Source: Callorhinchus milii (lineage: Eukaryota). Taken from it: a DNA stretch of 64,000 bases. The notes below the pieces were generated by a model that searched no databases, was not told where the DNA came from, and saw only the letters and a list, made by a program, of their open reading frames with translations. A program made the position numbers and the translations under genes. Below are positions 5,330 to 61,315 of this stretch, in pieces. The DNA is taken from contig NW_024704810.1 of assembly GCF_018977255.1 (NCBI RefSeq), positions 1 to 64,000 of the forward strand, written 5' to 3'. How positions within the stretch are numbered: the stretch's first letter is position 1; each line of letters starts with the position of its first letter.

Positions 5330-5500
5330 CTAGAGCAACATTAGTGTGTATGAGGGAGCCAATGTCAACTGTAAGAGGAAGCACCTGTTACTGCTGCCTA
5401 GCTAGTTAGTTACGGAAAGCAACGTGGCAAGTTATGTAAGTCGAATTTATGTGAAATAAGATTTGGTGCAACATCTGCTGTTGGACTGCTGCTACAGTAC
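5330..5500 (-). promoter_or_regulatory. Conserved ETS/E-box plus CTCF-like block, copy 1 (degenerate)
   Basis: GGAAGCACCTG 5377-5387; ACAGCAGATGTTGC 5468-5481 (3 mismatches to CTCF core). Confidence 0.5.
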
Positions 5501-6285
5501 GTGTAAAATTTCAGAGTGCTAATAGCAAATTACTTTCGGCCGTCTTACCTTTCCTTGTCCTAACTCATCCAGTGGAAATGTTTGCCTTAGTGTCAGAGCT
5601 TCCTGGAACATCCGTCTCCAGTCTCATTCATATCATCTAACTGTGACTTATCTGTGCTTAAGTTGCTCGCCCATGTTAATTTAATATAACACATTTTGTT
5701 TTTTAAATGACTGTTTTAGTGACACTGCTGCATACAATTGGCTTCCGCTTTTAGCCTACAGAAATGGCAGACAATTCACTTACACTGTAAGCTGTGAAGC
5801 TCTTTGAGACGTCTCGTTCACCCATTCATATTGCTGACCTTCGGAACACTATAAACATTTATTCAGTGTGTTCTTTGTTTCCAGGCATTGATTTTACCTG
5901 ATATAGCTGCACAACATGAATCAAGTTCATCTGTTATCCACACATCACAAGTACAGCTTTCTGAGTGTCACGTTTTGATCAGAGATCATAGAAACTTGAA
6001 AGTCTGTGTGTTTGAAAGGCACATCAATGAGACACGATTAATTGCAACGATTCTGAATGTGATTAATATGTTGATACCTCGCACTGTATACCACACGCCA
6101 ATCATTCCAGTTCACGCCAGGCTCCACTGACACCCTTTGAATTAACTGATTGATTTCAAGATCCTCATATCCGTCTTCACTCCCTTCATGCCCTGGCATT
6201 TACCGAGATGTCTGAACAGATATAATTGCTGTTTAGTTGGTCGATCGATGCAATGACTCCCCCTCGCGGTTTAGCTTCAAGTTGA

Positions 6286-6324
6286 AGTTTTTGTACGGAG
6301 CCGCCATAGCACGGCAGCAGTGTG
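6286..6324 (-). other. 23-RSS (variant heptamer)
   Basis: CACACTG 6318-6324, 23-bp spacer, ACAAAAACT 6286-6294. Confidence 0.85.
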
Positions 6325-7185
6325 GGCTCCTTGGCGCAGTAATACACGGCACTGTCAGTCATCAGGACTGTGTCTATACTCAGTTCAAATTCTTCACTCG
6401 TTTTATCGACAGTGGAGTAAAATCGGTTTGGAAAGTCAGGATTATTCTTATCCTTTCCTCCAAAAGACCGAAGTATGTAGACAAGAACGTTCCTGGAAGC
6501 TTTTCTGTACCAGTAGAGATAGGAGGCATCACTGACTTTCTTTAAACTGCAGTATATTTTGACATCTTCTCCCACTTGAGCCAATATTTCATCAGTCGAT
6601 TGTTTACCAGGGTCTTGCAGGCTGATTCCTGTGATAAAAATCAATACATTTGTAGTGGGATAAGTTTCCGTTTGCGGAATCCTTTCGGGTATTGGTTAAA
6701 ACACTCGACTCGCATGCAAGAGGAACCAAGCAGGTCGTAAACTTAGGCAACTTTCCTTACTCAACATGTCAGTCGATAGTTGCATGAATTTACAAGCGAT
6801 AATAATCTGTTCAACAAGAAAAGTGAATAATAATACATATTGGTCACTCTATCCTTCGACTGTTTGGAGGGATCGGCTGTGCCAATTTGCTGCCATGTTT
6901 GACCCACAACATACACATTCAGCTCATTTTTCCGAGTATAACGTGAAGCACTTCGAGACGTCTCAAATACATCAAAAGGCGTTATATCAAAGGCACGGTT
7001 TAATACTATTATCGAAATTGTATCAAATGCATGAATATTATTTTGATATCAAATGCATAGATATTACTATATTTTTTCAAAACATAACATAAGTTATTTA
7101 ACACCGAAAAAGGCATAAAACGTGACGTACGGCAAAGTAAGATGAGAGTTATTGAGAGCACAGCGCACATCTCCCACATGAGCAT
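6325..7185 (-). CDS. TRAV/DV: TCR alpha/delta V gene (family B), apparently functional
   Basis: Leader 7131-7185 (MLMWEMCAVLSITLILLC-R, C|GTACGT); V exon 6325-6628 ..KIYCSL..YWYRK..RFYS..DSAVYYCAKEP. Confidence 0.87.
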
Positions 7186-7239
7186 CCTGATCCCTGTCAG
7201 AATCGAGATAAGGCGCTGTATCAAATGACAACGATTGGT

Positions 7240-7630
7240 ATTGTTTTACGTGTCAGAGAAGGTTGGACGCGGTATTCACTGGAAGCCCCTGAGTGTGTGC
7301 AGGTGGTTAGACTGTGGCCTAATGTGTATTGGCTTCACATCCCCTGGGGCAGGTGTCAATTTGGTAACGAGAGGAAACGAGATATTGAGAGGGTTCAAAG
7401 CGACAGGGAAGAGCCAGGTGATGTCAGCAGTTACTCAGATTTCTCTGCCCCAGTTAGTTGCAAGTTTCCTTCCTCCCACTTTCTGCTCTATGCATCTGTA
7501 TTACAGATATTTGGGTACAAAATACAGTTTTCCAGCATAATTCATGTGTACAAGTTATTGTATTATAAGGTGCATTTTCTCAGTGTTTCATGTATTAATA
7601 TATATTTTTTATAAACTCTGTGTCTGACAC
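7240..7630. repeat. Conserved ~390-bp non-coding module; other copies near 17600-17990, 30460-30720, 39600-39965, 45370-45510, 58100-58500
   Basis: Recurrent gtattcagtggaagcc-ctgagtgtgtgcag...gtcaatttggtaacga...gagagggttcaaagcg...tttgggtacaa...cataattca; function unknown. Confidence 0.75.
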
Positions 7631-13500: not shown

Positions 13501-13924
13501 TAATTCTGGGGGATAGGGAGCCAATCGAGCCGGGCAATGCTGGGTGTGAATGGGTCAAGCAGCTTTCTGGGGAAGAGGACAGGAGGTGCAGAACTCTGGA
13601 GATCTGCAGCTTTGTGATTGGAAGTGTTGGAAATATCGACTAGAAGGGAATTGGTGTGTCGAGCCTTGTCGAGCCTATTTCTACAGTTCCTCGCTTCGAT
13701 TAAACTCATCAGTTTTAATCTCCTTCCCAAATTAAACGCAAAACAACTGATCATAATTGGCGTTTAAAAAATCTCACAAATGTATTATCGCATTGATATC
13801 AACTTGAGGGCGACTGCTTATTTGGGATGAAAACGATGAAATAGAAAAAGGGTCACACCAATTGTTTCTTGAGCAAACTAAGCCTTGTGTTATTCATGCT
13901 TAAGACACGGTTTGTACATTTCAT

Positions 13925-14095
13925 CTGAAGCAGCACTAGTTTATGAGTGTACCAAAGTCAACCGTCACAGGAAGCACCTGTTATTGCTGCCAACGAAGTT
14001 AGTTACAGAAAGAAACTTGACAAGTTATGCAACTTGCAGTTCATGTTATGTGTGGCTTTAGTCCGCCATCTGCTGGTGGATTGCCTCTACAGCAC
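13925..14095 (-). promoter_or_regulatory. ETS/E-box plus CTCF block, copy 2 (perfect core)
   Basis: CAGGAAGCACCTG 13968-13980; CCAGCAGATGGCGG 14063-14076. Confidence 0.65.
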
Positions 14096-14636
14096 GTCTT
14101 AACTGTCCAGGTCCGATCTGCTCCACCAGAAATTTATGTATTAGTCTCATTTCACTGCTCATTCCTCATAGTGTCTGAGCTTCACTGGAATTTTCGGCTC
14201 CAGTCAACTTCACAAACTCTTACTGTAACGATTCTCTGATTTTATTTGTTCCCACACTTTAATTTTATTCTTCGCTCTTTTCCTGTAGTCTTGAGTAATA
14301 AGTTTCTGAATATTGAGCAAGGATTGCACACTTACGCGGTAGAAAAAACACATGTATATTTATGGAGCTCCAGTCACATCAGGAGGATGCCCCAAGGCGC
14401 TGACTACACAATGTATAAAACACGAAATAATCTTCATATTTCTTCTTTGCATACATGAGTGTACTTTAATTACTGACGTGGACCAGCATGGACATTTGTT
14501 TAGTTAGTGCTTCGATTCCAGGCATTAATCGAATCTATTGTAACTGCTCAACCTGAAATGCTCTACCAGGTTCACCCATATGGTATCGTTTGCAAGGCGA
14601 ATACTCTAACCCCGGAGCTACAGAACTCCAAACGGC

Positions 14637-14700: not shown

Positions 14701-15554
14701 TCTGCTGGCGTTTGGGAGCCAGTGGATCTGGGCTCGTATGGAGGCATAGACTCTTGATTCACCAAAAAAGAATTTACTTCACAGAATTATCCATGAAGCG
14801 CTTTGAGACGTCTCGAAGTCGTCATGCAGTGCTATAGAAAATGCAAGGATTATTGTCATTATTGTGAATGCATTCATTTGGTTGAAGTTGAACCATGCAG
14901 CCCAGCCATAAGCAATACATGTTTACTTTCTATCATGAAGGCTTGGGTGGCAACCTGCCTCTCTTGATATTACTTTCTCTTAGGTGTCAGAATGTTTTTC
15001 GTTCAGGATCCCATTCTGCACCATGATCTCACAGTCTGGACTGCAATTCTTATTCAGGCAGTTTGAGGGTTGTAGTATTAATTAGCTCCAGATAAAAGCC
15101 ACCGCTCGCTTCAGGAATATCTGTGGGGAAATAAATTTATGAAGATTGCCTGTTGTGATTGCCCACAAAATAACTCCATCTGTTTTTGACAGCAGCTGGT
15201 TTCATCATTTTGGTTACACGTGCAACACGAAAGGCACTATATCAACGGCAAGAATTGTTATTATTATAGTTACTGTCAAGTCCTGTTTGGAATTGAGTGC
15301 AGAGTCAGGGAATGTCCATCTAAGATAGTTCTTCATATCCTAAATAAAAAGAAACCATGTCAGTTTTAATCTCCTTACCAAAGTAAACCAAAACAAATCA
15401 CTTAACAAAACATGGCACATGTATTACGGCAGTGAGATCCAGTTAAGGGCTTCGGCTTAATTGGGAGAAAGTTAATAACATTAAAAATAATACAATTAAA
15501 GTGCTTCTTGAGCTACCCACTGCCATGCTTTGGACATATCTCTGTACATGACAG

Positions 15555-15730
15555 TTGAAGCAGCAAACGGTTTTGTGAGGGGACTATGGCAACAGTCAAA
15601 GGAAGCACCTGTTATTGCAGCCAAGTAAGACAGTTACAAAAAGAAACGTGGCAAGTTTTGTAAGTTGCAGCTTATGAAATATGCGTGTTTAGTGACTCAT
15701 CTTCTTGTTAGACGTAGCTACGGCAGTTGT
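15555..15730 (-). promoter_or_regulatory. ETS/E-box block, copy 3 (CTCF core decayed)
   Basis: GGAAGCACCTG 15601-15611; CTCF position degenerate near 15694. Confidence 0.45.
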
Positions 15731-16308
15731 ACAACTGGAACCATTTGAAAGCAAATTGATCTCATCCCCACTTTAATTTCCCGGTTGTGAATGGCGATAT
15801 AAAAATGAAAGTTGTTGTTTTTCATGCTTTCCTACATACTGAAGCAGCACAGAAAGACATGCACGTGTATCGAGACTCACATGAAAGCGAGACGTTTAAA
15901 ATTATTTCAGTGACTATATCTTGATTGTATTTAATAATAATAGTAATTGCATTCTTGCGGATGTTATAGCGCCTTACCACGTATTCGAGACGTTGCTATT
16001 CTTCGTAAAATACGCTGCAAATTAATCGATTCACACAGTGTGGGTGAAAAGCGGAAGCTAATTTCCGCACATCAGTGCACCAATGGATTGAGTGACAAAT
16101 ATATTATTATTATTTTGAAGGAAATATTACCACTGGAAAGAACCGACAATCGACTAAAAAGCGGTTTACTACTGACAGCTACCTAAACAGAGACGAGTGT
16201 GTGGAGTAAGGAAACTTGCTCAATGATTCGTTCCTCTGGCAATTTAACCCACGACTCTCGATTGCGAGGCGAGTGCTGTAACCTCTCAGCTACAGGAACC
16301 CACACCGC

Positions 16309-21790: not shown

Positions 21791-22889
21791 AGAAACACAC
21801 ACAGTGCCACACAATCAGGTCACTCAATCCACAATATTTTGTGGGCCGCTGTTTTATACAGTTGGCTACCACGTTTGGCCCACACAAGACAATCTAACGC
21901 CCCACACCTAACCTAACCCTAAACTCCCCCTTCCACCCCACCTTCCACACTCTCCCAATCCCACAGCGCCGAAAAATCTGGCAACTCAAACCACAGCTTT
22001 TTGTGGGACACTGCTGTACACAACTGGCATCAAAAAATATGGTCACTACACTTTTCAGCGTATTCTGTGAAGAGCTCTGAGCCGTCTCAATGACGTATTA
22101 TTGCAGTATATCAAATGCAACTTTTGCTTTTATTATCGTTCTGATTACAATGTTGAATAAGATGTGCCCTTACTAATGTTTTTAGTATTCGGGTTTCAGA
22201 AATGCTTTTATCAAATACAGCCTTGTCATTTAGTCGATACGCCTCAAACCTCCTCAAACAATTTGTATGCAACACTTTCCTACGAACAGCTATGAATGAA
22301 GATGAATTTAACCGATTGAAAGTCCGTCCAGACACTGGTTGAAAACTTTCTCGAGCATTGCAATGGCATCACTATAGTCCCTTCATGCAAGCCGCCTGGG
22401 CCTGGGTTTAATATCTCCTCGGTAGGACAAGCTTCACCAACAATACTGACAGCCAGGCCTGCTCTAGAGTGTCAGACCAGAACAGCAGAACGTAATCCAA
22501 ACAGTATTTCACAGTGAGCAGTTTCGTCGCTTTTGAATGTTTCAGTTGCCGGATGACATATCAATGATCTTTTTAAATTGCATAGTAATAAACGTATTAA
22601 ATAGCTCAATGTTCACGTTTAATGTAGTTGCCTGAACAAACTGTGAGGAGCAGATTTTTTTTTCACACTGCCAGTGGTTCTGATCTTGAATGCATTGCCT
22701 GAAAGGTTGGCAGAAGCCGATACTGTAAACAAATGTCAACAGAGAATTGCTATACCGCAGAGAAAACAATTTAAGAGCTGCTGCTAATCGAGAATAAAGG
22801 CAATAATGTAAAATAGGTGAGATAGAAATTGTTTCATGAGCAACCTAGGCCTTATGTTAATACTTTAGGCAAATATTTGTAAATTTCTG

Positions 22890-23065
22890 TTGAAGTAGTA
22901 ATAGTGTGTATGAGTGAAATATGTCAACTGCAACAGGAAGCACCTGTTACTGCTGCAAAGGAAGTTAGTTACAGAAAGGAGCGTGACGTGTTATGTGAGT
23001 TGCAGCTCATGTTATTTGTGTTTGTTTAGTGCGCCATCTGCTGGTGGATTATAGCTACAACACGT
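22890..23065 (-). promoter_or_regulatory. ETS/E-box plus CTCF block, copy 4 (perfect core)
   Basis: CAGGAAGCACCTG near 22934; CCAGCAGATGGCGC 23031-23044. Confidence 0.65.
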
Positions 23066-24125
23066 ACACAATTGGAGAGGTTTCATAGCATAATTATTTT
23101 GGGCCCGTCTTGCCTTTCCTTGGTGCTATCTTCTCCACAGGAAGTTTATGCATTAGTCAAGTTTCCCTGCTCGTTCCCCTTATTTTCTATTCCTCTCTGG
23201 AACATTCGGATATTCGGTGTCATTCACATTCTTTTACATTGACGTGTCTCTATGCTAACACTTGCTGCGCCACTTGCTCCTCCTCCCTTTCTATTCATTT
23301 CCTTGTCTTATTATTTCATCGATTATATCATTTGACTGAACAATTAGCTGACTTAGAGCATTTTGCACCAGTGTGACAAAATATTGCCATTTATTTCAGT
23401 CAGTTCACGTCAGGAGGACGTCGCAAGGGAAATGTGCTGACTGGACTTAAAATGAAATTTAATGTTCATTCTTCTTTAACTTCAATACAATAAATTGTTT
23501 CGTTTCTTCAGTGACTCGCCAAGAACGCTCCCATACGTGGAAAGCGCTAACTAGGAATAGGAGCAGACCATCAGGTCCTTGAGTTTGTTCCAACGTTATA
23601 TTACATTATGGCTGATTTATCTCTCAACACATATTCTAACCTTTTCTTCGTAACCCTTGATATTCTGAGCTAAAATAAATGTATCCGACTCAGTCTGGAA
23701 AATGTGAATAGAACCAACATTTCCAGAATCTTTGTGGAAGTTTTCCAGATTTCCTTAAATTTTTTATATTTTTTTCCTGCCAATTTCTTTGCTAACTGGA
23801 CTGGCTCTAATGCACCCTTATTCTGCATTCCCCGAACCACCAGAAGAAACAGTTTCTCAACAGATAGTTTTTGTTTAAGCAATTTAAACGGAAATTGTTT
23901 GTTTTGATGTTTACTTACTTAATAATGCAGCATAGAAAGAATCGTACATGTGGCAGCGCTCCCCAGCAAACAAGACATTTTTAATTACCACTTTGATGAT
24001 AACATGACTACAGTTAATAACAATAATAATAATAGTTGCATTTGATATAGCGCCGTATCACATCTTCGAGACGCCACTCAGTGCTTCATTCAATATGCAG
24101 TAAACGAATTGACTGCATAGTGTGA

Positions 24126-27016: not shown

Positions 27017-28084
27017 GTTGGCTGCTGAGGTGTGGACAGATAATGGGATCTCTTCCTTTGTATATCGCTGTGTTGCTGCTTCAGCGACAACTTGTGAGGC
27101 AGCGGCTGATCTGACGTGTTGAATGGTTTATTTTGTACAATTGTAGGCGTTTCCCACTAACCAGAGGAACTTGAACTTGATCTGATGGCGATTGGGAGCC
27201 AATGGGTCTGGGCTTGGATGGGAACATTGACAAACTTTTCATCCAATGTCATTTCCCTTACAATGTATTATGTGAACCGCTTTGCGATGTCTGTAAGATG
27301 TGATCAGTCACTACATCAAATGAAAACTTTATTTTTATTTAAAACTTTATTATTAAAGTGAATGCATTCGTTAAGTTGATGAATGGTTGAGACATGCAGC
27401 AGAGACTGAAGGGATAAAAGTTTACGTTCTGACATCAAGGCTGAGGTGACAACATTTCTCTGTTGATGTTACTTTCTCCTGTGAGGATCACGAAGTTGAT
27501 CTGCCGCGGATTGAAGGCGAGAGGTTCTGGGCCAGGATGTGAGTAGTCGCGTTTCACCCACTCACAATTTTGTTTTAAACTATATTCTGTGAAGCGCTTT
27601 CAGACGCCTCCATGACGCAATATGGTTCCATATCAAATGGTCATTTTTATTTTCATTATTGATCTGAATGCATTCACTTGGTTGATTTTGAACCAAGCAG
27701 CCCAGCTTTAGAAAAAAGTTTATTTTCTATCATCGTGGCTGAGGTGAAAATCTGCCTCTGTTGCTGGTACTTGCTTTTATGCGTCTGAATGTTGTTGGTT
27801 TTGCACCCAGTTCGGCAGTTACATCTCACAGGCGATACGAGATAGTTCTTGAATTCTTAAATTAAATTAAACTAGGGCGGTTCTAATCTCTTTTTCAAAC
27901 TAAACCAATATCAATGACCGTATTGTTCTTTACAAAAATTAACACATTTATTACAGCAGTGAGATCCACATAAAGGCCGCTGTTTATGTTGTAGAAATAC
28001 AACACATATAACAAGTGACACAACTGATGCTTCTCGAGCAATATAAGTTTTGTGCTAATCATTTTTCAGACAAGATTTTTACAC

Positions 28085-28265
28085 TTCAGCTGAAGCAGCA
28101 ACAGTGTTTATGAGTGAACTATGTCAACTGTAACAAGAAGCACCTGTTATTGCTGCCAAGTATGTTGGCTGCAGAAAGGAATGTGACAAGTTATGTCAGT
28201 CGGAGCTCATGTTATATATCTTTCCAATGCGATATCTGCTGGCGGATTGCAGCTACAGCTTTTGT
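28085..28265 (-). promoter_or_regulatory. ETS/E-box plus CTCF-like block, copy 5
   Basis: GAAGCACCTG near 28137; CCAGCAGATATCGC 28229-28242 (2 mismatches). Confidence 0.55.
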
Positions 28266-28407
28266 GCATTTGGAGACAGTTGATAGCAAACAGTTTTCGG
28301 CCCGTCATAATTTTCCCGTTATGAATTTCACTACGTAAATGCAAGTTAAGGTTTCTTATTTTTTACCCTTTTTTCAAAGAACAGGTGAAGACACTTCAAC
28401 GTGCAGG

Positions 28408-34041: not shown

Positions 34042-34094
34042 CCTGATCCCGTGTCTGACATTAACTCCCCAATGTGGATTGATGGGGCCTTTTG

Positions 34095-35409: not shown

Positions 35410-35590
35410 TCAGTTGAAGCTGCAATAATGTGTATGAGTGAACACTGTCAACTGCAACAGGAAGCACCTGTTACTGCTGCAAAGTAAGCAAGTGACAGAA
35501 AGCAACGTGACAAGTTATGTTAATTGCAGCTCATGTTCCATGTGTTTGTTTGGTGCGCCATCTGCTGATGGATTGTAGCTACAGCACATA
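35410..35590 (-). promoter_or_regulatory. ETS/E-box plus CTCF block, copy 6
   Basis: CAGGAAGCACCTG near 35458; TCAGCAGATGGCGC 35555-35568 (1 mismatch). Confidence 0.6.
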
Positions 35591-36681
35591 TACATTTGGT
35601 GGGGTTTCGCAGCATATAGTTGTTTTTGTTTTTGCATTGGAATTTGATATATTTGTCACATTTTCCTGCTCGTTACTCCTATCTTCTGTTTTTCCCTGGA
35701 ACATTCCTGTGCAACGTCGGTCACATTCCTTAATTTGTCATTTCTCTGTGCAAACATTTGCTGCCTGACTTGCCTTTTTAGTTCATCGCCAAAACGCTCC
35801 CCTAAGTGGAAAGCGCTAAATTGGAATACCAAGAGGCCATTCTGCTCCTTGAGCCATTTCCAACGTTAATTCATATCTTGGCTGATACATCCCTCAGCTC
35901 ATATTCCAGCCGTTTCCCCCAATCGATTGAAATTCTGTCCGAAAATAAATGTATCCAACTTCGTCTGCATAATAGGAACGGAACTAACATCCCCAGAATC
36001 TTTGTGGAAATTTTCCAGATTTCCTTACATTTTTCATAATTTTTTTTCTAATTGTCTCTGCTAACTGGACTGGATAATGCACTTTTACTTCTACATTCCC
36101 CAACCAACCAGAATAAACAGTTTCTCAATAAATAGAGGAAATAGTTTTTGGGGAAACTACATAAATGGAACTTGTTTATTTTGATGTTTTCTTACTGAAT
36201 AAAGCAGCACAGAAAGAATCGTGCAAGTGACAGCGTTCCCCAGAGGCAAGACATTTTTTACTTATTACTTGGATGATAACATGACTACAGTTAATAACAT
36301 TAATAGCAATAACAGTTGCATTTGATACTACGCCGTATCAGATCTTCGGGACGCCACACAGTGCTTCATAGAATATACCGTAAATGAATTGACTGTATAT
36401 TGTGAGTGCAAAGCACTGCTACAAATTGTACACATCGCTATCCCAGTGCATGAAGTGCCCAATTTATTATCAACGCTAATATTCCGAAGGAATTGTTATC
36501 TCTGGAAAATCGAAACGCCAATCTATTAACAACCTGCTTCCCACTTACTGCTGGTAACCAGAGACGTGTATGTGTGGAATAAGTAAAGTTGCACAATGCT
36601 TCGTTCTGCTGGGAATTGAACCAAAGTCTCTCCCTTGTGTGGCGAGTGCTATAACCACTGAGCTACAGGGTTCCACATGGC

Positions 36682-41763: not shown

Positions 41764-42774
41764 GTTGGCTGCTGAGGTGTGGACAGATAATGGGATCTCT
41801 TCCTTTGTATATCGCTGTGTTGCTGCTTCAGTGACAAGTTGTAAAGAAGCTGCTGATGTGATGTGTTCAGTCGTTTATTACCTCCAATTGTAGGCGTTTC
41901 CCACTCACTAGAGGATCTTAAATTTGATCTTCTGGTGATTGGGAGCAAATGGGCCTGGGATTGGATGGGAGCATCGATTCGCCTTTCACCCACAAAGAAT
42001 GTACTTTACGTTATATTCTGTGATGCTATTTGAGACGTCTCTAATAGTAGTGAGTCGCTGTATAAAGTGCAATGTCTATTATCATTCCTGTGAAAGCATT
42101 AGTTTGGTTGATGTTCAACAATGCAGCCCAACCTAAGTGGTTGAAGATTTAATTTCTACCATCAAAGCTGAGGTGACAGCCTTTCCCCGTTGATGATAGT
42201 TTCTATTCTGAGTCAGAATGTTGTTGGTTCAGGAGACATGTCGGCACTTTGAGCTCACAGTCTCGACTGAAAGTCAAATACAGGACTGTGTGTGGAATGC
42301 GATGTCCTCAAAACTCAGAAAAAGCCGATCACAGACGTTATGAATATTCGTGGGGAAATTAATGTTTGAATATTGCTTCATAATTTGGCTCACAATGTGC
42401 AGTCAATGCTTTTTACATGAATACGATGTAAAGTCTTGGAACCGCCTCCAACCTGAAAAGAGCTGTATCAAAGGCAAGTAATATTGTTATTGTTAATATT
42501 GTTATCGATGACCAAATCTTCTTATCATTGCAACAAAATAAGGAACCTGCAAACTCAGATACCTAAACCATATTGAACAAAGTCAGCTTTAATCTTCTTC
42601 TGCATTGAAACCAAAACAAGCGAACATATTGCTGCTAAGAAAATGAAGTACATTTGTTCACCATAAAGTGCGGCTGCTTACTTGGGAGAAAGACAATAAA
42701 GCATAGAATCAGAAATTTTAATTGCTTCTTGAGTAACCTAAGGCCACGCCGTAGGCAAATCTTTGTAAATTACA

Positions 42775-42945
42775 GTTGATCCAGTAACAGTGTATAAGAT
42801 GGAAGTATGTCACCTGTAACAGGAAGCAATCTGTTATTGCTGACAAGTCAATTAGTTACAGAAAGGAACCTGACAAGTTATCTGAGTTGCAGCTCAGCTT
42901 ATATATTTTGGTGCACCATCTGCTGGTGGATTGCAGCTAAAGCAC
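42775..42945 (-). promoter_or_regulatory. ETS plus CTCF block, copy 7
   Basis: CAGGAAG near 42820; CCAGCAGATGGTGC 42913-42926 (1 mismatch). Confidence 0.6.
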
Positions 42946-43505
42946 GTGCACAGTTGGAGGCATTTGAAAGCAAATAGTTCGCAGCCAATCTTTTCTTTCC
43001 CAGTTGTGAATGTTGCTGTATAAAAGAAAGTTGTTGTTTCGGATGAACGTCTACTTATTTAAACAGCACAGATGGACATGCACACGTGGCGAGACTCCCA
43101 GGGAAGCAAGACGTTTGAAGTTATTTATGTGAATGTAGCATTATTATAATTAATAATGATAATAACATTCATTGCAGTAATTCACTTGGTATCGCGCCAT
43201 ATCTCGTATTCAAGACCCTTCAAATCGCTTGACAGAATAGACTGTACACGAGTTGACTGCATATTGTGTGGGTGAAACGCGGCAGTCAATTGCTCACATC
43301 AATGTCCCACTGGATTGAGTGCACACTTCAGTATTAATATTATTGTTTTGAAGAAGTAATTACTTCTGGGAAATCGATTCGCCAATCGAATAACAACCGG
43401 GTTCCTTCTTTTACTGCTCGTTGAACAGAGTTGTTCGTGGAATAAGGAAACGTGCACAAAGCGAAGCGAATCCTCTCTCTACTGAGCTACAGGACTCCAC
43501 CTGAC

Positions 43506-49795: not shown

Positions 49796-50909
49796 CACAC
49801 TGTGCCACACAATCAAGTCACTCAATCCAGAACAATATATGGGCCACTGTTTTATACAGTTGGCTACCAAGTTTGTCTCCCCCCCATTACAATCTAACGA
49901 CCCATCCAACCCCTCCGCCCCTCCACCCCACACCCCACTATCTCCAACACCCACAGTGCCGCAAAGTAAGGCAACTCAAACCACAACATTTTGTGGGACA
50001 CTGCTGTACACAATTGGCATCATACAATATTGTCACTCATCCTTCCAGGGTATTCTGTGAAGAGGTTTCAGACATCTCAATGACATAATATGGCAGTATA
50101 TCAAATGCAATCTTTGTTATTATTATCGTTATTATCACAGTGTTGAATAAGACATACCCTTACATTTGTGTTCATTAACCGTGTTTGAGAAATGCTTTTA
50201 TCATATACAGCCTTGTCATTTGGTCAATACGCCACAAAACTCCTCGCTGGTTTTAATGTCGATTACAGAGACAGCGTGGTTGTCAACTTGGCACCCGATT
50301 TGTGCATAATACTGTCCCGCAAACAGCTATGAATGAAGGATGAATTTTATAGATGCAAGTCTGCCCAGACAGCGGTAGAAACCTGGTTACTTCTCGAGCA
50401 GTGCAATGGCATTTTCATAGTCCCTTCAAACAAGCCGCCTGGACCTGGGTTTAATATTAACTCGGTAGGACGAGCTTCACCGACAATAAAGACAGCCAGG
50501 CCTGCTCTAGAGTGTCAGCCCAGAACAGAAAAAAAAATCCAATACATATTACACAGTGATCTTTTCAGTCGCATTTCAATATGTCAGTTGCGGGATGAAA
50601 TATCAATGTTTTTATTATACAGTTATATACCTATTAAGTAGCTTAATGCTCACGTTTAATGTAGTTACCAGACCGATATATTTTTTTCGCACAGCAAGTT
50701 GTTCCGATCTTGAACGCGTTGCCTGAAAGGGCGACTGAAGCCGTTACGGTTACAACTTTCAAGAGCGAATTGTTTTGCCGAAGATAAAACTATTTATTAG
50801 CGGCTGCTATTTGGGATGAAGGCAATAATATTCAAGCATGCGGCATAGAAATTGTTTCTTCATCAACCTAAGCCTTGTGTGAATACTTTAGGCAAATATT
50901 TGGAAATTT

Positions 50910-51090
50910 CAGTTGAAGCAGCAATAGTGTGTATGAGTGAAAACTGTTAACTGCAACAGGAAGCACCTGTTACTGCTGCAAAGTAAGTAAGTGACAGAAA
51001 GCAACGTGACAAGTTATGTTAATTGCAGCTCATGTTCCATGTGTTTGTTTGGTGCGCCATCTGCTGATGGATTGTAGCTACAGCACATAT
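50910..51090 (-). promoter_or_regulatory. ETS/E-box plus CTCF block, copy 8
   Basis: CAGGAAGCACCTG near 50957; TCAGCAGATGGCGC 51054-51067. Confidence 0.6.
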
Positions 51091-52179
51091 ACATTTGGTG
51101 GGGTTTCGCAGCATATAGTTGTTTTTGTTTTTGCATTGGAATTTGATATATTTGTCACATTTTCCTGCTCGTTACTCCTATCTTCTGTTTTTCCCCGGAA
51201 CATTCCTGTGCAACGTCGGTCACATTCCTTAATTTGTCATTTCTCTGTGCAAACATTTGCTGCCTGACTTGCCTTTTTAGTTCATCGCCAAAACTCTCCC
51301 CTAAGTGGAAAGCGCTAAATTGGAATACCAAGAGGCCATTCTGCTCCTTCAGCCATTTCCAACGTTAATTCATATCTTGGCTGATACATCCCTCAGCTCA
51401 TATTCCAGCCGTTTCCCCCAATCGATTGAAATTCTGTCCGAAAATAAATGTATCCAACTTCGTCTGCATAATAGGAACGGAACTAACATCCCCAGAATCT
51501 TTGTGGAAATTTTCCAGATTTCCTTACATTTTTCATAATTTTTTTTCTAATTGTCTCTGCTAACTGGACTGGATAATGCACTTTTACTTCTACATTCCCC
51601 AACCAACCAGAATAAACAGTTTCTCAATAAATAGAGGAAATAGTTTTTGGGGAAACTACATAAATGGAACTTGTTTATTTTGATGTTTTCTTACTGAATA
51701 AAGCAGCACAGAAAGAATCGTGCAAGTGACAGCGTTCCCCAGAGGCAAGACATTTTTTACTTATTACTTGGATGATAACATGACTACAGTTAATAACATT
51801 AATAGCAATAACAGTTGCATTTGATACTACGCCGTATCACATCTTCGGGACGCCACACATTGCTTCATAGAATATACCGTAAATGAATTGACTGTATATT
51901 GTGAGTGCAAAGCACTGCTACAAATTGTACACATCGCTATCCCAGTGCATGAAGTGCCCAATTTATTATCAACGCTAATATTCCGAAGGAATTGTTATCT
52001 CTGGAAAATCGAAACGCCAATCTATTAACAACCTGCTTCCCACTTACTGCTGGTAACCAGAGACGTGTATGTGTGGAATAAGTAAGTTGCACAATGCTTC
52101 GTTCTGCTGGGAATTGAACCAAAGTCTCTCCCTTGTGTGGCGAGTGCTATAACCACTGAGCTGCAGGGTTCCTCATGGC

Positions 52180-54714: not shown

Positions 54715-55779
54715 GTTGGCTGCTGAGGTGTGGACAGATAATGGGATCTCTTCCTTTGTATATCGCTGTGTTGCTGCTTCAGTGACAAGTTGTGAGGCAG
54801 CGGCTGATCTGACGTGTTGAATGGTTTATTTTTTACAACTGTAGGCGTTTCCCACTAACCAGAGGAACTTGAACTTGATCTGATGGTGATTGGGAGCCAA
54901 TGGGTCTGGGCTTGGATGGGAACATTGACAAACTTTTCATCCAAGTCATTTCCCTTACATGTATTGTGTGAACCGCTTTGCCATATCTGTAAGATGTGAT
55001 CAGTCACTACATCAAATGAAAACTTTATTTTTATTTTAAACTTTATTATTAAACTGAATGCATTCATGAAGTTGATGAATGCTTGAGACATGCAGCAGAG
55101 CCTTGAAGGGATAAAGGTTTACGTTCTGACATCAAGGCTGAGGTGACAACATTTCTCTGTTGATGTTACTTTCTCCTGTGAGGATCACGAAGTTGATCTG
55201 CCGCGGATTGGAGGCGAGAGGTTCTGGGCCAGGATGTGAGCAGTCGCGTTTCACCCACTCACAATATTGTTTTAAAATATATTCTTTGAAGCGCTTTCAG
55301 ACGCCTCCTTGACGCAATATGGTTCCAGATCAAATGCTCATTTTTATTTTCATTATTGATCTGAATGCATTCACTTGGTTGGTTTTGAACCAAGCAGCCC
55401 AGCTTTAGAAAAAAGTTTACTTTCTATCATCGTGGCTGAGGTGAAAATCTGCCTCTGTTACCGGTACTTGCTTTTATGCGTCTGAATGTTGTTGGTTTTG
55501 GACCCAGTTCGGCAGTTTCATCTCACAGGCGATACGAGATAGTTCTTGAATTCTTAAATTAAAGTAAATAGGTCGGTTGTAATCTCTTTTTCAAGCTAAA
55601 CAAATATAAAGGACTGCATAGATCTTAACGAAAATTTACATATTTATTACCGAAGTGAGATCCACTTAAGGATGGCTGCTTGTGTTGGACAAAGACAACA
55701 CCTATAAAAAGTGAAGCAAATAATGTTTCCTGAGCAACCGAAGTTTTGTGATCATAATGCTTCAAAGTTTTTACACTTC

Positions 55780-55955
55780 AGCTGAAGTAGCAACAGTGCA
55801 TATCAGGAAACTATGTCAAATGTAAGAGGAAGCACCTGTTATTGCTGCCAAGGATGTTAGTTACAGAAAGGAACGTGAGAAGTTATGTCAGTCGCTGCTC
55901 ATGTTATGTGTGTCTTTAGTGCGAGTTCTGCTGTTGGATTGGAGCTACAGCACAT
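55780..55955 (-). promoter_or_regulatory. ETS/E-box block, copy 9 (CTCF core decayed)
   Basis: GGAAGCACCTG near 55828; ACAGCAGAACTCGC 55921-55934. Confidence 0.45.
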
Positions 55956-56299
55956 GTATATTTGGAGACAGTTGATAGCAAATTGATTTCGGCCCGTCAT
56001 AACTTTCCCGTTTCGAATGTCGCTACGTAAATGAAAGTTAATATTTCTTATTTTTTCCGACTTGCTCAATTAGCTGAGGAAGACTACCATGTGCAGATCT
56101 CCGCAGAACGCAAAATATATGAAGTTATTTATGTGAAAATAACATGATCGTACTTAATAATAATAAGTATCGTTGCATTTAATACAGTGCAAAATCAGTT
56201 CTTCGAAACGCCACAAAATATTTTGCCGTGAATTGAACCCACGTATCTTGCTTGCTTGGTTGATTTCGAGGCGAGTGCTATAAACATTTAGCTACAGGC

Positions 56300-57475: not shown

Positions 57476-59167
57476 ATATACTTAATCTCACAGGCGTTGA
57501 GGGAACGTTGATGGTGCAGTTGGAGAATGTTGGCTGGGAGAGAGTAAGATACGGTGAGGAGTACTAAACAGGAATAACCTAGAGAAGTTACTCTACACTG
57601 CGAGGGAGATGGTCTGAGGGTTACGTACAAATCTTGTGTTTCTGCGTCATTTTCTCTGCTCTGCCGTATCGCTCCTCCATTGTTTCTCTTCCATCACTAA
57701 TATGTTTTTGTTCAATCGGATGTCTGAAACCTGTAGCAAGATACACCCATATGTAAGTTCATCAAACGCTCATAAATGAGTTCACATATATGTACAATGA
57801 GTAGAGTTCTGTAGCTCACGGATTAAAGCCATCGCCCCAAGCGAGAGATATCTGTTCGATTCCTGACATGGTCAACTGTTGGTCAAATTTCCTTACTCCA
57901 CACTCAACACTGTTAACAGCGCAGTAAGTAGGAATCTGGTAGTTAGGTAGATTGCTGGTTTACTTGCTGGGTAAATAAATCCTGTTTCGCCTTCAAAATG
58001 CACAGCCAATATAATTTAGAGAATATTCTGTGAAGCACATTGAGACATCTCAGAGGCGAAATTATTCGCTCTATTCAATGTCAAGGTTTCTTGTAATACA
58101 GATAATCAAAAGAAGGCAGGACGTGTATTCAGTGGAAGCCACTGAGTGTGTGCAGATGGCAAGACAATGACCTAATGTGTGTTGGCTTCACATCCCCGGG
58201 GGCAGCTGTCAATTTGGTAACGAAGTGAAACGAGGCGTTGAGAGGGTTCAAAGCGAAAGGGTAGGAGCCACGTTTCGTCAGCAGTTTCTCAGCTTTCTCA
58301 CCCCCAATTAGTTGAGAGTTTTCTTCTTGCCACTCTCCGCTCAAGGTTGTGGGTTACTGCAGTTTGGGAACAAATCCCAAGTTTCTTAGCATAATTCATT
58401 TCTACAAGTTACTGCGTTGTACGATTTATTTCGATGAATGATACTTCACAGATTCACATTTATTTTTCGTAACCGGTGTGTCACACATGTGAGGACACCC
58501 ATCACCGTTCTTTTGAATGACCAAACCAACCTGTGAGTTATAATAATTGCCCTTGCGTTTGATATCAAGCCTTATCAATTACCGAGGAGTCTATAAGTTC
58601 TTCACAGTGTAGAGTATCGCCAGTGTATTTTGTGGACAAGACCTGGCAGCTAAGTGCGCACAGCAGCGTCTCACAAACAGTCTTTGATCGAGTGATGTAC
58701 ATTTATAATCGACGAAAAGCGATCATCTCAAACGCCTGTCACGCGGGCTCAGATTTCCGGATCAGTAAATCAATAAAAATAACAATAAACCTTGCATTTG
58801 ATACAGCTCCTGATCTCGTCTTCGAGATATTACACAGCGTTTTATAGGTTGTACACACAGTGTATATAAGTTATAAGTGAATTGATTGCGTTTGCTATGG
58901 GATAATTGCAGCAGCCGATTGCGCGCAACCGGATCCCACAAACTGTTGTGGAATAAAGAAAATGTTGCTTTCCAGTTGAAACAATTCTTACCCTCTGAAA
59001 TGCGATCTGCCAGTAAACTACCAGCCATATTCCTACACAATTCAACGTAAGCAGACGCATGAGGAGTTCGGAAACTTGCAAAACGTTTTGACCTGACGGA
59101 AACCGATCCCAGGCCCTCACGCTTGCGAGGCGAGTGCTCTAACCATTGAGTTGCAGTAAAACCAACA

Positions 59168-59206
59168 TGTTTTTGTACAGTTGCCTCTTAGACGCACAGC
59201 ACTGTG
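59168..59206 (-). other. 23-RSS
   Basis: CACAGTG 59200-59206, 23-bp spacer, ACAAAAACA 59168-59176. Confidence 0.9.
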
Positions 59207-59666
59207 CCCTCCGCACAGAAGTAAGTGGCGGTGTCTGTCATTCGCACCTCAATGATTGTTAGAGTGCAGTTTCTCTGTTTTGATTAATCAATGCTCTTTT
59301 CCTGTCCTTCACATTTATATCACTTTTTCCCAAAACCAAGAACCGAATGGAGCCGTTGCCAATTGTTCATACCACTGAAAGGCAGGAGTGGTCACAGTGG
59401 TACTGCAATCCATAGAAACATTTCCATTTTCATTCACTGTCACGGCCTGAGGTGTCTGTGAGACATCACTTGCGGCCAAGACACCTGGAAAGAAACAAAA
59501 TGAACATTCTTCGAAAGGATATCGGAAAATATCTGCCACGACAATTTGTAATTATTTAGGAGGAAAAAACAGAAGCATTTACTTGAAAACAATACATAAT
59601 CTACTTACACTGTAGAAATAATATTATATTCAAAATAACATAATTTGCACTGTAATTATGCTTCAT
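59207..59666 (-). pseudogene. TCR V pseudogene (family C), frameshifted as assembled
   Basis: Leader 59609-59666 (MKHNYSANYVILNIILFLQ); V exon 59207-59484 is 278 nt with two 1-nt deletions (after QWYEQ and before NCTL). Confidence 0.75.
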
Positions 59667-61134
59667 TTTCAACTGCCGTCGATTCACTTCTGTATTTTCC
59701 GTTGATATGCAAAGATAAATTGGCGAAATGTAGCGTCTGGTTGATAAGCGTTTTTTCATTTGAGGAGTTGTCTCTTATCCCCGCGTCATTATCTTGTCTC
59801 TGTTCATTGCTGGAGGTGCAGGGCTACTCCTCCTACAGTTTATGTTTAGATTCCCTTCTCCTCGCTGTGGCCAACTATAGTAATGCGTGAAGAGTCAGTG
59901 TAGGCCGACCTTGTGACAAAGATTCAGGAAATATGCAAATAATAATAGCCATAATTCCTGCAATTGATATAGCGGCTTATCAGCTCTTCGATACGTCTTG
60001 AAATGATTTACAGAATATAAAATTAATTGACTGTAATTTGCGAGTGAAACTCGGCAGGAAGTTGCACACAATAGTGCCTCGCAAACAGTCATTGAGCGAA
60101 TGACCAACTTATCACTTTTTTTACGGTGTTATTATCCTGGCAATCTGTGCGCTGTTCGACTAATAAGCGGGTTCCTATTTACTGTTCGGGTAAACAGAAT
60201 CGTGTGGAGTAAGGAAATTTGCACAACATTTCGCAATGATGAGAACCGTATGCGTGTATCCTGCTTGCGAGGTCAGTGTTGTAACCACATACTTAAGGAA
60301 CAAGATGTACTTTGGCGAAGAGCCAATATCTTTATAGATAAATATTAAATATATTTATAGATCTTTGTAGACTTACAGGAATAGCGTACGAAGACCTTTG
60401 TGATTAAGCGAATGAGCTCAAAAATTTCCTGGGTTCCCTTCAAACCAGGTTTAGGATATAAGGAACATATTTTCCAGTAATCGTGGAAGTAGAACAATCG
60501 GAGCATCCTGATAGCCCCTTACATTGTGTCGACTGAACATCTCCAATTTGTAGTAAATTTTGTTGTTCGATACTCTACGTTTCGAGTATATCTGTTGTTC
60601 AGAACGGAAAGTGTAAACCAAGCCATGGGATGCGGTTGGCGACCTTCTGAAAAAGATGAGAAGAGGTGTGCAGTAACATGATTTATTGAACCACTTTTTA
60701 CAGGATTTCAAGCCAGTGCTGTCTGGTCAGAGTAACAGCGCACGTGCGACACCAAGTGGTCAAACACTGCAATATATTTTTTACCCTGAAACAGGAATAA
60801 TAACATAAATGAAATATCAATATATTTTTTAATTATATAGTAATAAACTTATTAAATAGCTTAATAACACGTTTAGTGTATCCGAACAAACAGTGAGGAG
60901 GGCAGAAGTTTTTTTTCATACGGCGAGTTGTTCTGATCCTGAATGCATTGCCTGAAAGAGTGGCAGAAGCCGATAATCTAACAACTTTCAAGAGAGAATT
61001 GCTGTCCAGTAGAGAATATAATTTAACAGCGGCTGCTATTTGGGATAAGGGGAACAATATAGAATATGTGAGATAGAAATTGTTACTTGAGCAACCTAAG
61101 CCTTGTGCTAATACTTTAGGCCAATATTTGTAAA

Positions 61135-61315
61135 TTTCAATGGAAGCAGCAAACGTGTGCATACGTGCACTCTGTCAACTGCAACAGGAATCACCTGTTA
61201 CTGCTGCAAAGGAAGTCAGTTACAGAAAGCAACGTGACAAGTTATCTGTGTTGGAGCTCATGTTATATGTGTTCCTTTAGTGCGCCATCTGCTGGTGGAT
61301 TGTAGCTACAGCACG
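61135..61315 (-). promoter_or_regulatory. ETS/E-box plus CTCF block, copy 10 (perfect core)
   Basis: CAGGAATCACCTG near 61185; CCAGCAGATGGCGC 61282-61295. Confidence 0.65.

What the first reader, a model, noticed from the sequence alone, without database searches (positions are those of the whole stretch)
5330..61315. Ten co-oriented CTCF/ETS/E-box modules, one 3' of the RSS of every family-A V gene
Seen: a conserved non-coding block (about 170-bp core, about 350 bp with flank) recurs near 5.4, 14.0, 15.6, 23.0, 28.2, 35.5, 42.9, 51.0, 55.9 and 61.3 kb. It contains (CA)GGAAGCACCTG (an ETS core abutting an E-box) and, about 85-95 bp away, CCAGCAGATGGCGC on the minus strand. This matches the CTCF core CCASYAGRKGGCRS perfectly at 14063, 23031 and 61282, with 1-2 mismatches at 28229, 35555, 42913 and 51054, and is decayed at 5468, about 15694 and 55921. 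Every copy points in the V transcription direction, toward the presumed D/J/C end, and sits 0.4-1.6 kb 3' of an RSS: all 8 family-A genes, the A remnant, and one family-B gene. Established: mammalian Tcra/d and Igh V arrays carry V-associated, uniformly oriented CTCF-binding elements that govern loop-extrusion-based RAG access. Inference: an equivalent CTCF architecture may be built into the duplicated V cassette of a cartilaginous-fish TCR locus, with CTCF coupled to ETS and E-protein sites. I am not aware of this being described, but could not search the literature.
Basis: partly seen in the sequence, partly recalled or inferred. Interest (0 to 1): 0.85.

Follow-up and report, generated by a model that had tools for sequence, protein, structure and literature searches.

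The report
Conserved regulatory block behind TCR V genes
A roughly 320-bp non-coding block sits behind every family-A T-cell-receptor V gene in this chimaera-like V array; its ETS/E-box core is clearly under selection, while the CTCF-like site beside it is strong in six of ten copies but, across all copies, evolves no more slowly than its surroundings, so the proposed CTCF looping architecture is plausible but unproven.

Summary
There are exactly ten co-oriented copies of a ~320-bp non-coding block. Each lies 0.37-1.6 kb 3' of an RSS: all eight family-A V genes, one A remnant and one B gene. All 23 V or V-like segments are on the minus strand. The closest proteins are from Callorhinchus milii.

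- **ETS/E-box.** The 25-mer AGGAAGCACCTGTTAYTGCTGC... is the slowest-evolving stretch of the block, at 0.36 versus 1.38 changes per column (P~3e-7). A ~75-101-bp core is as conserved as the V-A promoter.
- **CTCF-like site, against.** Across all ten copies it diverges like its flanks (1.15 versus 1.30 changes per column, P~0.33). Its highest-information positions are among its most variable columns. Four copies are decayed, two of them behind intact-looking V genes. It also overlaps an E-box and a YY1-like core.
- **CTCF-like site, for.** Six copies score 15-20 bits, far above chance. All nine hits of 12 bits or more in the window share the V orientation. Retention exceeds a neutral simulation (P~0.02). 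An independent CTCF-like motif lies ~22 bp past the family-B RSS.

RNA, coding and terminal-inverted-repeat (TIR) transposon readings found no support. A genome-wide repeat could not be tested. Occupancy data are needed.

The parts
5204..5527 (-). Block copy b5.4, about 0.78 kb 3' of the RSS of the family-B V gene at 6.3 kb. P1 (ETS/E-box) is at 5376-5400 and intact. The CTCF-like box is at 5465-5483 and decayed (8.2 bits).
13800..14102 (-). Block copy b14.0, 3' of the family-A remnant (14584-14670). P1 is at 13969-13993 and intact. The CTCF-like box is at 14060-14079 and strong (19.7 bits).
15439..15753 (-). Block copy b15.6, about 0.6 kb 3' of the RSS of A16 (V exon open). P1 is at 15600-15624 and intact. 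The CTCF-like box is at 15691-15709 and decayed (5 of 14 core positions changed).
22767..23090 (-). Block copy b23.0, about 1.57 kb 3' of the RSS of A24. P1 is at 22935-22959 and intact. The CTCF-like box is at 23028-23047 and strong (20.3 bits).
27966..28288 (-). Block copy b28.2, about 0.7 kb 3' of the RSS of A29. P1 is at 28135-28159 with the ETS core mutated (AGAA) and the E-box intact. The CTCF-like box is at 28226-28245 and decayed (GG to AT, 8.9 bits).
35292..35614 (-). Block copy b35.5, about 1.1 kb 3' of the RSS of A36. P1 is at 35459-35483 and intact. The CTCF-like box is at 35552-35571 (15.4 bits, 1 core mismatch).
42660..42972 (-). Block copy b42.9, about 0.58 kb 3' of the RSS of A43. 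P1 is at 42821-42846 with the ETS core intact and the E-box disrupted by a 1-nt insertion. The CTCF-like box is at 42910-42929 (16.4 bits).
50790..51113 (-). Block copy b51.0, about 1.1 kb 3' of the RSS of A52 (frameshifted pseudogene). It is a recent duplicate of b35.5 (97% identity). P1 is at 50958-50982 and intact. The CTCF-like box is at 51051-51070 (15.4 bits).
55662..55980 (-). Block copy b55.9, about 0.37 kb 3' of the RSS of A56 (decayed nonamer). P1 is at 55827-55851 and intact. The CTCF-like box is at 55918-55936 and decayed.
61019..61341 (-). Block copy b61.3, about 1.4 kb 3' of the RSS of A62. P1 is at 61186-61210 (GGAAT, E-box intact). The CTCF-like box is at 61279-61298 and strong (20.3 bits).

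Best explanation
The block is a cis-regulatory module that belongs to the duplicated family-A V cassette of a TCR alpha/delta-like V array. The cassette runs promoter, leader, ~400-bp intron, V exon, 23-RSS, variable spacer with SINE debris, then the block.

**What is shown.** The selected part is a ~75-101-bp core. Its centre is the near-invariant composite AGGAAGCACCTGTTAYTGCTGC, an ETS GGAA core abutting a CACCTG E-box with a CAACTG Myb-like box just upstream. Two further conserved boxes follow: AGTTACAGAAAG and AACGTGACAAGTTATG.

**What is inferred.**
- Lymphoid ETS-family and E-protein (E2A/HEB-type) factors bind this core in thymocytes.
- Binding opens chromatin or drives non-coding transcription next to the V-A RSS, raising its accessibility to RAG.
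- About 85-95 bp away lies a facultative architectural site, CCACCAGCAGATGGCGCAC, on the V sense strand.
- In the six copies where this site is intact, it would bind CTCF and stall cohesin-driven loop extrusion coming from the J/C side. That would prolong contact of the neighbouring V with the recombination centre, as at mouse VH CTCF-binding elements.
- In the other four copies this site has been lost and now drifts neutrally.

The conservation pattern and motif matches are shown. Factor identity, occupancy and the effect on recombination are inferred.
For: **Copy number and linkage.** There are exactly ten co-oriented copies, all cassette-linked.

**Cross-clade identity.**

| Segment | Identity | Gaps |
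|---|---|---|
| Block core, 101 bp | 0.764 | 0.7% |
| V-A promoter | 0.756 | |
| V exon | 0.82 | |
| Intron | 0.65 | 43% |
| Flanks of the block | 0.41-0.48 (shuffled baseline ~0.38) | |

**Constraint on the core.**
- The ETS/E-box 25-mer shows 9 changes in 25 columns versus 1.38 per column elsewhere (Poisson P=3e-7). It is the minimum of all 25-column windows.
- The 181-256 core gives P=1e-7.
- AGGAAGCACCTGTT has at most 1 mismatch in 10 of 10 copies.

**CTCF-like site.**
- Six copies score 15.4-20.3 bits. Hits of 19.5 bits or more are expected 0.02 times per 64 kb.
- All nine hits of 12 bits or more are on the V sense strand, against 1.75-1.8 expected on both strands.
- A neutral simulation on the block tree expects 2 tips at 15 bits or more. 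Six are observed, P~0.02.
- An independent CTCF-like motif lies ~22 bp past the family-B nonamer, in the same orientation (B48 22.3 bits, B33 13.3 bits).

**Precedent.** Mouse V arrays carry uniformly oriented V-linked CTCF sites. PAIR elements combine Pax5, E2A and CTCF sites. CTCF orthologues are characterised in cartilaginous fishes, including C. milii.

**Alternatives that failed.** There is no ORF, no RNA structure, no Rfam hit in the block and no shared terminal inverted repeats.
Against: - No occupancy, accessibility or transcription data exist here. Factor assignments rest on short motifs.
- Over all ten copies the CTCF box evolves like its flanks (P=0.33). Its key G13, G14 and C15 positions are among its most variable.
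- Loss of the site in A16 and A29 has not been accompanied by visible decay of those V genes. The V-less remnant keeps a strong site. Site integrity therefore does not track V integrity.
- Most of the 320-bp block outside the core is only marginally more conserved than alignable intron (0.68 versus 0.65).
- Only one 64-kb window of one genome was available. Paralogues are not independent.
Confidence: 0.55

Rival explanations
1. The second box is not a CTCF site. It would be an E-protein E-box (CAGATG) or a YY1-like site (AGATGGCG). The block would then be a purely transcription-factor-driven enhancer or promoter-like element with no architectural role.
For: Within the box the best-conserved bases are CCAGCAGAT (0-1 changes per column). 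The GGC triplet essential for CTCF is among the most variable stretches, at 2-3 changes per column. CAGATGGC occurs 15 times against 1.7 expected. It recurs in the V-A promoter and in the unrelated E2 element. AGATGGCG matches the YY1 core as I recall it.
Against: The E-box CATCTG is intact in only 7 of 10 copies, which is no better than the CTCF reading at 6 of 10. The YY1 core needs the same GG bases, and these vary. The full 19-mer scores 20 bits against the CTCF matrix, which is expected 0.0001 times in a 320-bp block. That is more than an E-box alone would explain.
Confidence: 0.25
2. The block is a neutral passenger. It would be leftover 3' flank of the ancestral A cassette that looks like an island only because insertions and duplication breakpoints surround it. 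The motifs would be chance matches amplified by duplication.
For: The block as a whole is only 0.68 identical across clades, against 0.65 for alignable intron. The CTCF box shows no excess conservation. Ten copies trace to one ancestor, so the motif counts are not independent. Cassette history is mosaic.
Against: The ETS/E-box 25-mer and the 75-bp core are far slower than the rest of the block (P about 1e-7). They are nearly indel-free. A 20-bit CTCF match in 320 bp has a chance expectation of about 1e-4. The block survives even where the A V gene is deleted (rem14, B6).
Confidence: 0.12
3. The block derives from a transposable-element fragment, for example the body of a SINE. It was present in the ancestral cassette and either was exapted or simply hitch-hikes with the duplications.
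For: The cassettes are rich in TE debris. tRNA-derived SINE heads lie directly 3' of several A RSSs. Other repeats occur in both orientations nearby. In mammals many CTCF sites were spread by SINEs (my own knowledge).
Against: In the window the block never occurs outside the cassette context or in the opposite orientation. It has no shared terminal inverted repeats and no Rfam or tRNA match. It is separated from the tRNA-like heads by 350-1400 bp of variable sequence. A TE origin would not explain the focal constraint on the core.
Confidence: 0.15
4. The block belongs functionally to the next V gene downstream. It would be an upstream promoter-distal element or CTCF site, as at many mouse TRAV genes, rather than an element of the A gene's RSS.
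For: V genes are only 2-4 kb apart. Every block therefore also lies about 1-2 kb upstream of the next V or V remnant. In mouse Tcra/d, V-region CTCF sites are mostly upstream of V promoters (PMC5859386).
Against: The downstream neighbour differs between copies (B, C, D2, E or the A remnant), while the upstream neighbour is family A in 9 of 10 cases. Partial homology of the stretch between RSS and block links the block to the A cassette.
Confidence: 0.15

Closest known systems
RSS-proximal and intergenic VH CTCF-binding elements of the mouse Igh locus
   Same: Both are V-linked CTCF-motif sites, all in one orientation, pointing from the V array toward D-J-C. Here there are 9 hits of 12 bits or more in 64 kb. 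Mouse has 121 bound sites across a 2.8-Mb Igh locus and 144 across a 1.8-Mb Tcra/d locus (PMC5859386). The family-B motif ~22 bp past the nonamer mirrors the 'within 100 bp of the RSS' arrangement of proximal VH families.
   Different: The family-A site lies 0.4-1.6 kb from the RSS. It is embedded in a larger conserved module whose best-conserved part is not the CTCF motif. Only 6 of 10 copies are intact. The locus is TCR-like and chondrichthyan. Binding, cohesin stalling and convergent partners are untested.
PAIR (Pax5-activated intergenic repeat) elements of the distal mouse VH cluster
   Same: Both are intergenic elements duplicated together with one V family (14 PAIR copies). Both combine a lineage-factor site, an E2A E-box and a CTCF site (PMC3920468). 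This is the closest analogue in logic to ETS plus E-box plus a CTCF-like site.
   Different: PAIR elements are characterised by Pax5 binding and by antisense non-coding transcription. They are a mouse Igh feature. Here the lineage motif is ETS-like, transcription is unknown, and sequence homology was not tested and is not expected.
CTCF sites upstream of TRAV promoters in the mouse Tcra/Tcrd locus
   Same: The locus type is the same (TCR alpha/delta-like). In mouse, 129 of 144 V-region sites point toward J-C.
   Different: Mouse sites are mostly promoter-upstream. Here the V-A promoter island carries only a CAGATGGC box and no CTCF core. The motif lies 3' of the RSS instead.
ETS/E-box composite sites of lymphoid enhancers (for example muA-muE3 of the Igh intronic enhancer)
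   Same: Both have CAGGAAGCA followed directly by an E-box. This rests on my recollection of the Emu sequence and is a lead, not a test.
   Different: The E-box type differs (CACCTG versus CATGTG), as do the genomic position and the copy number. No binding data exist.

Membership tests
Vertebrate CTCF-binding element (CBE) | Sequence match to the CTCF core motif (CCASYAGRKGGCRS; JASPAR MA0139.1) | tested here: inconclusive
   Six of ten copies score 15.4-20.3 of 28.7 bits, with 0-1 mismatch to the IUPAC core. Four copies score below 9 bits. Hits of 19.5 bits or more are expected 0.02 times per 64 kb.
Vertebrate CTCF-binding element (CBE) | Purifying selection on the high-information motif positions | tested here: inconclusive
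   Over all copies there is no excess conservation (1.14 versus 1.30 changes per column, P=0.35). G13, G14, C15 and C4 are among the most variable columns of the motif. However, six copies retain the motif against two expected under neutrality (P~0.02).
Vertebrate CTCF-binding element (CBE) | CTCF and cohesin occupancy in vivo | not testable with these tools
   No ChIP, CUT&RUN or ATAC data were available.
V-array CBE architecture (mouse Igh/Tcrb/Tcra type) | Uniform orientation of V-region sites toward the D-J-C end | tested here: met
   All nine PWM hits of 12 bits or more are on the minus strand, the sense strand of all 23 V segments. They represent only about three independent origins. That the J/C end lies downstream is inferred from V orientation.
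V-array CBE architecture (mouse Igh/Tcrb/Tcra type) | Convergently oriented partner sites at the D-J-C or enhancer end | not testable with these tools
   The window contains only V segments. No plus-strand hit of 12 bits or more was found in it.
PAIR-like V-cluster regulatory repeat | Intergenic element co-amplified with one V family and carrying lineage-factor, E-protein and CTCF sites | tested here: met
   This holds at motif level only. There are ten copies tied to family A. The ETS core is intact in 9 of 10, the E-box in 9 of 10 and the CTCF-like site in 6 of 10.
PAIR-like V-cluster regulatory repeat | Stage-specific factor binding and non-coding (antisense) transcription from the element | not testable with these tools
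   No expression or binding data were available.
Transposable element / SINE fragment | Copies in both orientations and in unrelated contexts; terminal repeats; match to a repeat library | tested here: inconclusive
   Within the window these features are not met. All ten copies have one orientation and one context. There are no shared inverted repeats. The Rfam tRNA hits lie outside the block. No eukaryotic repeat library or whole genome was available. Look-ups of C. milii paralogues returned nothing.
Structured non-coding RNA / miRNA hairpin | Conserved secondary structure with compensatory changes | tested here: not met
   RNAalifold gives -4.8 and -6.4 kcal/mol on the two strands. The covariation term is unfavourable, and 0-1 pairs show double changes. 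The left arm of the GTAACAGG/CCTGTTAC palindrome varies without compensation. There is no Rfam hit.
Protein-coding exon | Open reading frame shared by the copies | tested here: not met
   Every copy has 2-11 stops in every frame, and there are frame-breaking indels. A candidate GTAAGT donor is not conserved.

The most novel reading that the evidence does not exclude
V-gene-linked, uniformly oriented CTCF sites coupled to lymphoid ETS/E-protein sites were already built into duplicating V cassettes in the common ancestor of holocephalans and other jawed vertebrates. Loop-extrusion-guided RAG scanning with V-side CTCF-binding elements would then be an ancestral feature of translocon-type antigen-receptor loci, not a mammalian refinement. 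In this window two V families would have reached it by two layouts: RSS-proximal in family B and a distal composite module in family A.
Probability: 0.3. Interest if true: 0.8.

Novelty: new variant of a known kind. Interest (0 to 1): 0.55.

Why it matters
Nearly all knowledge of how large V arrays are folded and scanned by RAG comes from mouse and human. Suppose a chimaera TCR V array carries V-linked, co-oriented CTCF sites next to an ETS/E-protein module. The CTCF/cohesin logic of V(D)J recombination would then date to the base of jawed vertebrates.

The natural intact and decayed copies (6 versus 4) would also give a ready-made allelic series. It could be used to relate site integrity to V usage.

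Independently of CTCF, the 25-bp invariant ETS/E-box composite is a concrete, testable candidate for a V-gene accessibility element in a cartilaginous fish. It is conserved as well as the V promoter.

The claim rests on sequence from one 64-kb window only, so its present value is as a well-defined hypothesis.

Tried and rejected
- **More V-A loci from Callorhinchus milii.** I tried to fetch further loci to gain independent copies of the block. Neither protein looked up is on record. No eukaryotic genome or repeat library is searchable with these tools, so the genome-wide-repeat test could not be run.
- **miRNA or structured-RNA reading of the 22-25-nt invariant stretch.** Rejected. There is no stable consensus fold and no covariation on either strand. 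There is no Rfam family in the block.
- **Exon reading.** Rejected. There are stops in all frames, and a candidate GTAAGT donor is not conserved.
- **MITE or TIR reading.** No inverted repeats are shared between copies.
- **Homology between the block and the second recurrent element, E2.** The local alignment score equals the shuffled null.
- **Correlation of CTCF-motif integrity with V-gene integrity.** None was found.
- **PDB sequence search to assign the V families to a chain type.** It gave only generic V-set hits, with V-delta and TCR-alpha as the best non-antibody matches.
- **Literature searches for CTCF in cartilaginous-fish antigen-receptor loci.** Nothing relevant was found.
- **Continuity across the N gap.** It could not be tested, because no paralogue spans both flanks.

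Full report
**What is in the window.**
- Twenty-three V or V-like segments of at least five families lie on the minus strand.
- Family A has eight members plus a remnant. Its genes end in YYCALS and carry a 23-bp-spacer RSS, CACAGAG-N23-ACAAAAACT.
- The closest database proteins are all Callorhinchus milii Ig-like domains, the best at 91% identity. The best non-antibody structural relatives are V-delta and TCR-alpha chains.
- A holocephalan TCR alpha/delta-like V array is therefore a fair description. The exact species is not established.

**Check of the observation.**
- Sensitive self-blastn with two divergent block cores returns exactly ten copies. All have one orientation, and there are none elsewhere.
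- Each copy lies 0.37-1.57 kb beyond an RSS: the eight A genes, the A remnant at 14.6 kb, and the B gene at 6.3 kb.
- The CTCF-like motif is on the V sense strand. By the convention used for mouse loci, that means it points toward D-J-C. The J/C side itself is not in the window.
- The N gap at 40193-40361 is intergenic and touches no block, exon or frame. Continuity across it cannot be decided, because no paralogue spans both flanks. I did not try to fill it.

**Anatomy of the cassette.** Aligning the regions upstream of the A genes reveals the promoter and leader exon: ATGACAATGTATATCTATGTGGTAGCAGTGATCATTACCTTGTCAG|GTAAGC. An intron of about 400 bp follows. Cross-clade identities, with recent duplicates excluded, are as follows.

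| Segment | Identity | Gaps |
|---|---|---|
| RSS | 0.89 | |
| V exon | 0.82 | |
| Leader | 0.82 | |
| Promoter | 0.756 | |
| Block core, 101 bp | 0.764 | 0.7% |
| CTCF-containing 81 bp | 0.70 | |
| Whole 320-bp block | 0.68 | |
| Intron | 0.65 | 43% |
| 300 bp on either side of the block | 0.41-0.48 | |

The shuffled baseline is about 0.38, so the two flanks of the block are effectively unrelated. The block is an indel-poor island. Only its core is conserved as well as the promoter. The remainder of the block is close to the neutral level.

**Where the constraint lies.**
- Parsimony changes per column on the block tree average 1.30.
- The 25 columns AGGAAGCACCTGTTAYTGCTGC... carry 9 changes, or 0.36 per column. 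That gives Poisson P=3e-7, and it is the minimum of all 25-column windows.
- Columns 181-256 (75 alignment columns) hold this stretch plus the boxes AGTTACAGAAAG and AACGTGACAAGTTATG. They carry 0.79 changes per column (P=1e-7).
- The 14-mer AGGAAGCACCTGTT has at most one mismatch in all ten copies.
- The ETS GGAA core is intact in 9 of 10 copies, and so is the E-box CACCTG.
- The CTCF-like 14-mer and 19-mer carry 1.14-1.16 changes per column (P=0.33-0.35, 40th percentile).
- Positions C4, G13, G14 and C15 of the CTCF motif are among its most variable columns, whereas CCAGCAGAT is nearly invariant.

- Six blocks score 15.4-20.3 bits and four score below 9.
- The exact score distribution gives 0.02 expected hits of 19.5 bits or more per 64 kb, and 1e-4 per block. 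The ancestral site is therefore very unlikely to be a chance match.
- Mismatches are bimodal. The six retained copies have 0-1 mismatches where 2-3 are expected from their branch lengths. The four lost copies have 2-5, which is about the neutral expectation.
- A neutral simulation on the block tree gives 2.0 tips at 15 bits or more against six observed. P is 0.02, falling to 0.001 at intron-like rates. The threshold and ancestor were chosen after seeing the data, so this is suggestive only.
- All nine hits of 12 bits or more in the window are on the V sense strand.
- An independent class exists. About 22 bp beyond the family-B nonamer lies AACCRCSAGGGGGAGCC. It scores 22.3 bits at B48, 13.3 at B33, and is decayed at B6, B20 and B8. 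This mirrors the mouse proximal-VH arrangement of a CTCF site within 100 bp of the RSS.
- Against a tight V-specific role, site integrity does not track V integrity. The pseudogene A52 and the V-less remnant keep good sites, while the intact-looking A16 and A29 have lost theirs.

**Ambiguity of the second box.**
- CAGCAGATGG contains an E-box, and AGATGGCG is a YY1-like core.
- CAGATGGC occurs 15 times against 1.7 expected. It occurs in the blocks, in four V-A promoters and, on the other strand, in the unrelated E2 element.
- Sequence alone cannot separate these readings.

**Alternatives examined.**
- There is no ORF.
- There is no conserved RNA fold or covariation on either strand. The GTAACAGG/CCTGTTAC palindrome around the ETS/E-box varies on one arm without compensation. 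That argues for a DNA-level protein-binding constraint.
- There is no Rfam family in the block. tRNA-derived SINE heads lie elsewhere in the cassette.
- There are no shared inverted termini.
- A genome-wide repeat origin could not be tested.
- Gene conversion does not explain the island. A24 and A62 share 98% identity over the V gene but only 81-85% over the block, so the two parts have separate histories.

**Comparison with known systems.**
- The nearest analogues are mouse V-linked CTCF-binding elements. In Igh and Tcrb all V-region sites point toward D-J-C. In Tcra/d, 129 of 144 do.
- The other close analogue is the PAIR elements: 14 intergenic repeats in the distal VH cluster with Pax5, E2A and CTCF sites.
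- The element here resembles PAIR in logic: a repeated V-family-linked module with a lineage factor, an E-protein and CTCF. It resembles the VH elements in orientation.
- It differs in position (0.4-1.6 kb 3' of a TCR V RSS), in factor motifs (ETS rather than Pax5) and in taxon.
- CTCF orthologues are characterised in cartilaginous fishes, including C. milii. Shark CTCF binding landscapes are reported.
- None of five literature searches found a description of V-linked CTCF or ETS/E-box elements in a chondrichthyan antigen-receptor locus. Only the open-access library was searched.

**Verdict.**
- The block is best explained as a V-A-linked cis-regulatory module. Its selected core is an ETS/E-box composite.
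- The adjacent CTCF-like site is credible in six copies but facultative, and its identity and function are unproven.
- It is a well-posed hypothesis of moderate to good interest, not a demonstrated architecture.

Noticed in passing
window 48622-48640, 33181-33199, 6254-6272, 20714-20732 (all minus strand): Family-B V genes carry a CTCF-like motif about 22 bp beyond the RSS nonamer, on the V sense strand. It is the strongest hit in the window at B48 (CAACCACCAGGGGGAGCCA, 22.3 bits). It is moderate at B33 (13.3 bits) and decayed at B6 and B20. The layout matches mouse proximal-VH RSS-adjacent CTCF-binding elements.
   Followed up: partly
window 7181-7743, 17500-18100, 30343-30799, 39511-40032, 45269-45574, 58006-58595 (+ orientation): A second co-oriented intergenic element, which I call E2, is ~550 bp long and has six copies. 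It lies roughly 0.3-1 kb 3' of the upstream V gene: D-family V genes in four copies, C41 and the B-like V at 8.3 kb in the other two. Its invariant core is GTGGAAGCCCCTGAGTGTGTGCAGATGGC. It has no detectable homology to the block (score at the shuffled null) and no CTCF matrix hit above 10.3 bits.
   Followed up: partly
window 24535-24606(-), 16229-16299(-), 62642-62713(-), 28673-28735(-), 31076-31135(-), 24281-24352(+): tRNA-like sequences, probably tRNA-derived SINE heads, are present. Several start only a few bases after the nonamer of family-A RSSs. The + strand copy at 24281-24352 is called tRNA-Ala(TGC) by ARAGORN.
   Followed up: no
window 16880-17330, 25330-25900, 29610-30180, 37330-37900, 44300-44700, 52860-53430, 57330-57820, 63430-64000 (minus strand): This is the conserved V-A promoter and leader island, at 0.76 cross-clade identity. 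It contains a CCAAT box, a CRE-like GATGACGCA, and a CACAGATGGCA box in four copies. The leader exon ends in CAG|GTAAGC and is followed by a poorly conserved ~400-bp intron. In A29 and A52 the first ATG of the leader is ACG.
   Followed up: partly
window 52220-52518 and 56300-56352: A52 is a pseudogene, with a frameshift and stops in the 5' half of the V exon and a 22-bp RSS spacer. A56 has YHC instead of YYC and a decayed nonamer (ACAAGAATT).
   Followed up: yes
window 24361-25950 versus 62468-64000; 33145-37014 versus 48586-52538: Cassette history is mosaic. A24 and A62 are ~98% identical over the V gene but only 81-85% over the block. A36 and A52 are 96-100% identical from the B gene through the block to the V exon, but only 0.7-0.9 upstream of it. 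This indicates recent unequal crossing-over or gene conversion with breakpoints inside cassettes.
   Followed up: partly
window 38796-39057 versus 54128-54389; 41477-41974 versus 54428-54925 and 26743-27227: A D2-like V at 38.9 kb is 92% identical to the one at 54.2 kb. Sequence upstream of the D2 V at 54.4 kb is homologous to sequence upstream of the C-family V genes. The 39.06-41.48 kb stretch holds an E2 copy, the N gap and C41. Relative to the 52-55 kb paralogue it looks like an insertion or an assembly join.
   Followed up: no
window 24017-24119, 28417-28607, 32355-32550, 36294-36404, 38070-38179, 47369-47556, 51793-51903, 62340-62471: A short interspersed repeat occurs in both orientations between V genes. 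This contrasts with the strictly co-oriented block and E2 elements.
   Followed up: no
window 644: There is a single unread base (N) besides the 169-bp gap.
   Followed up: no
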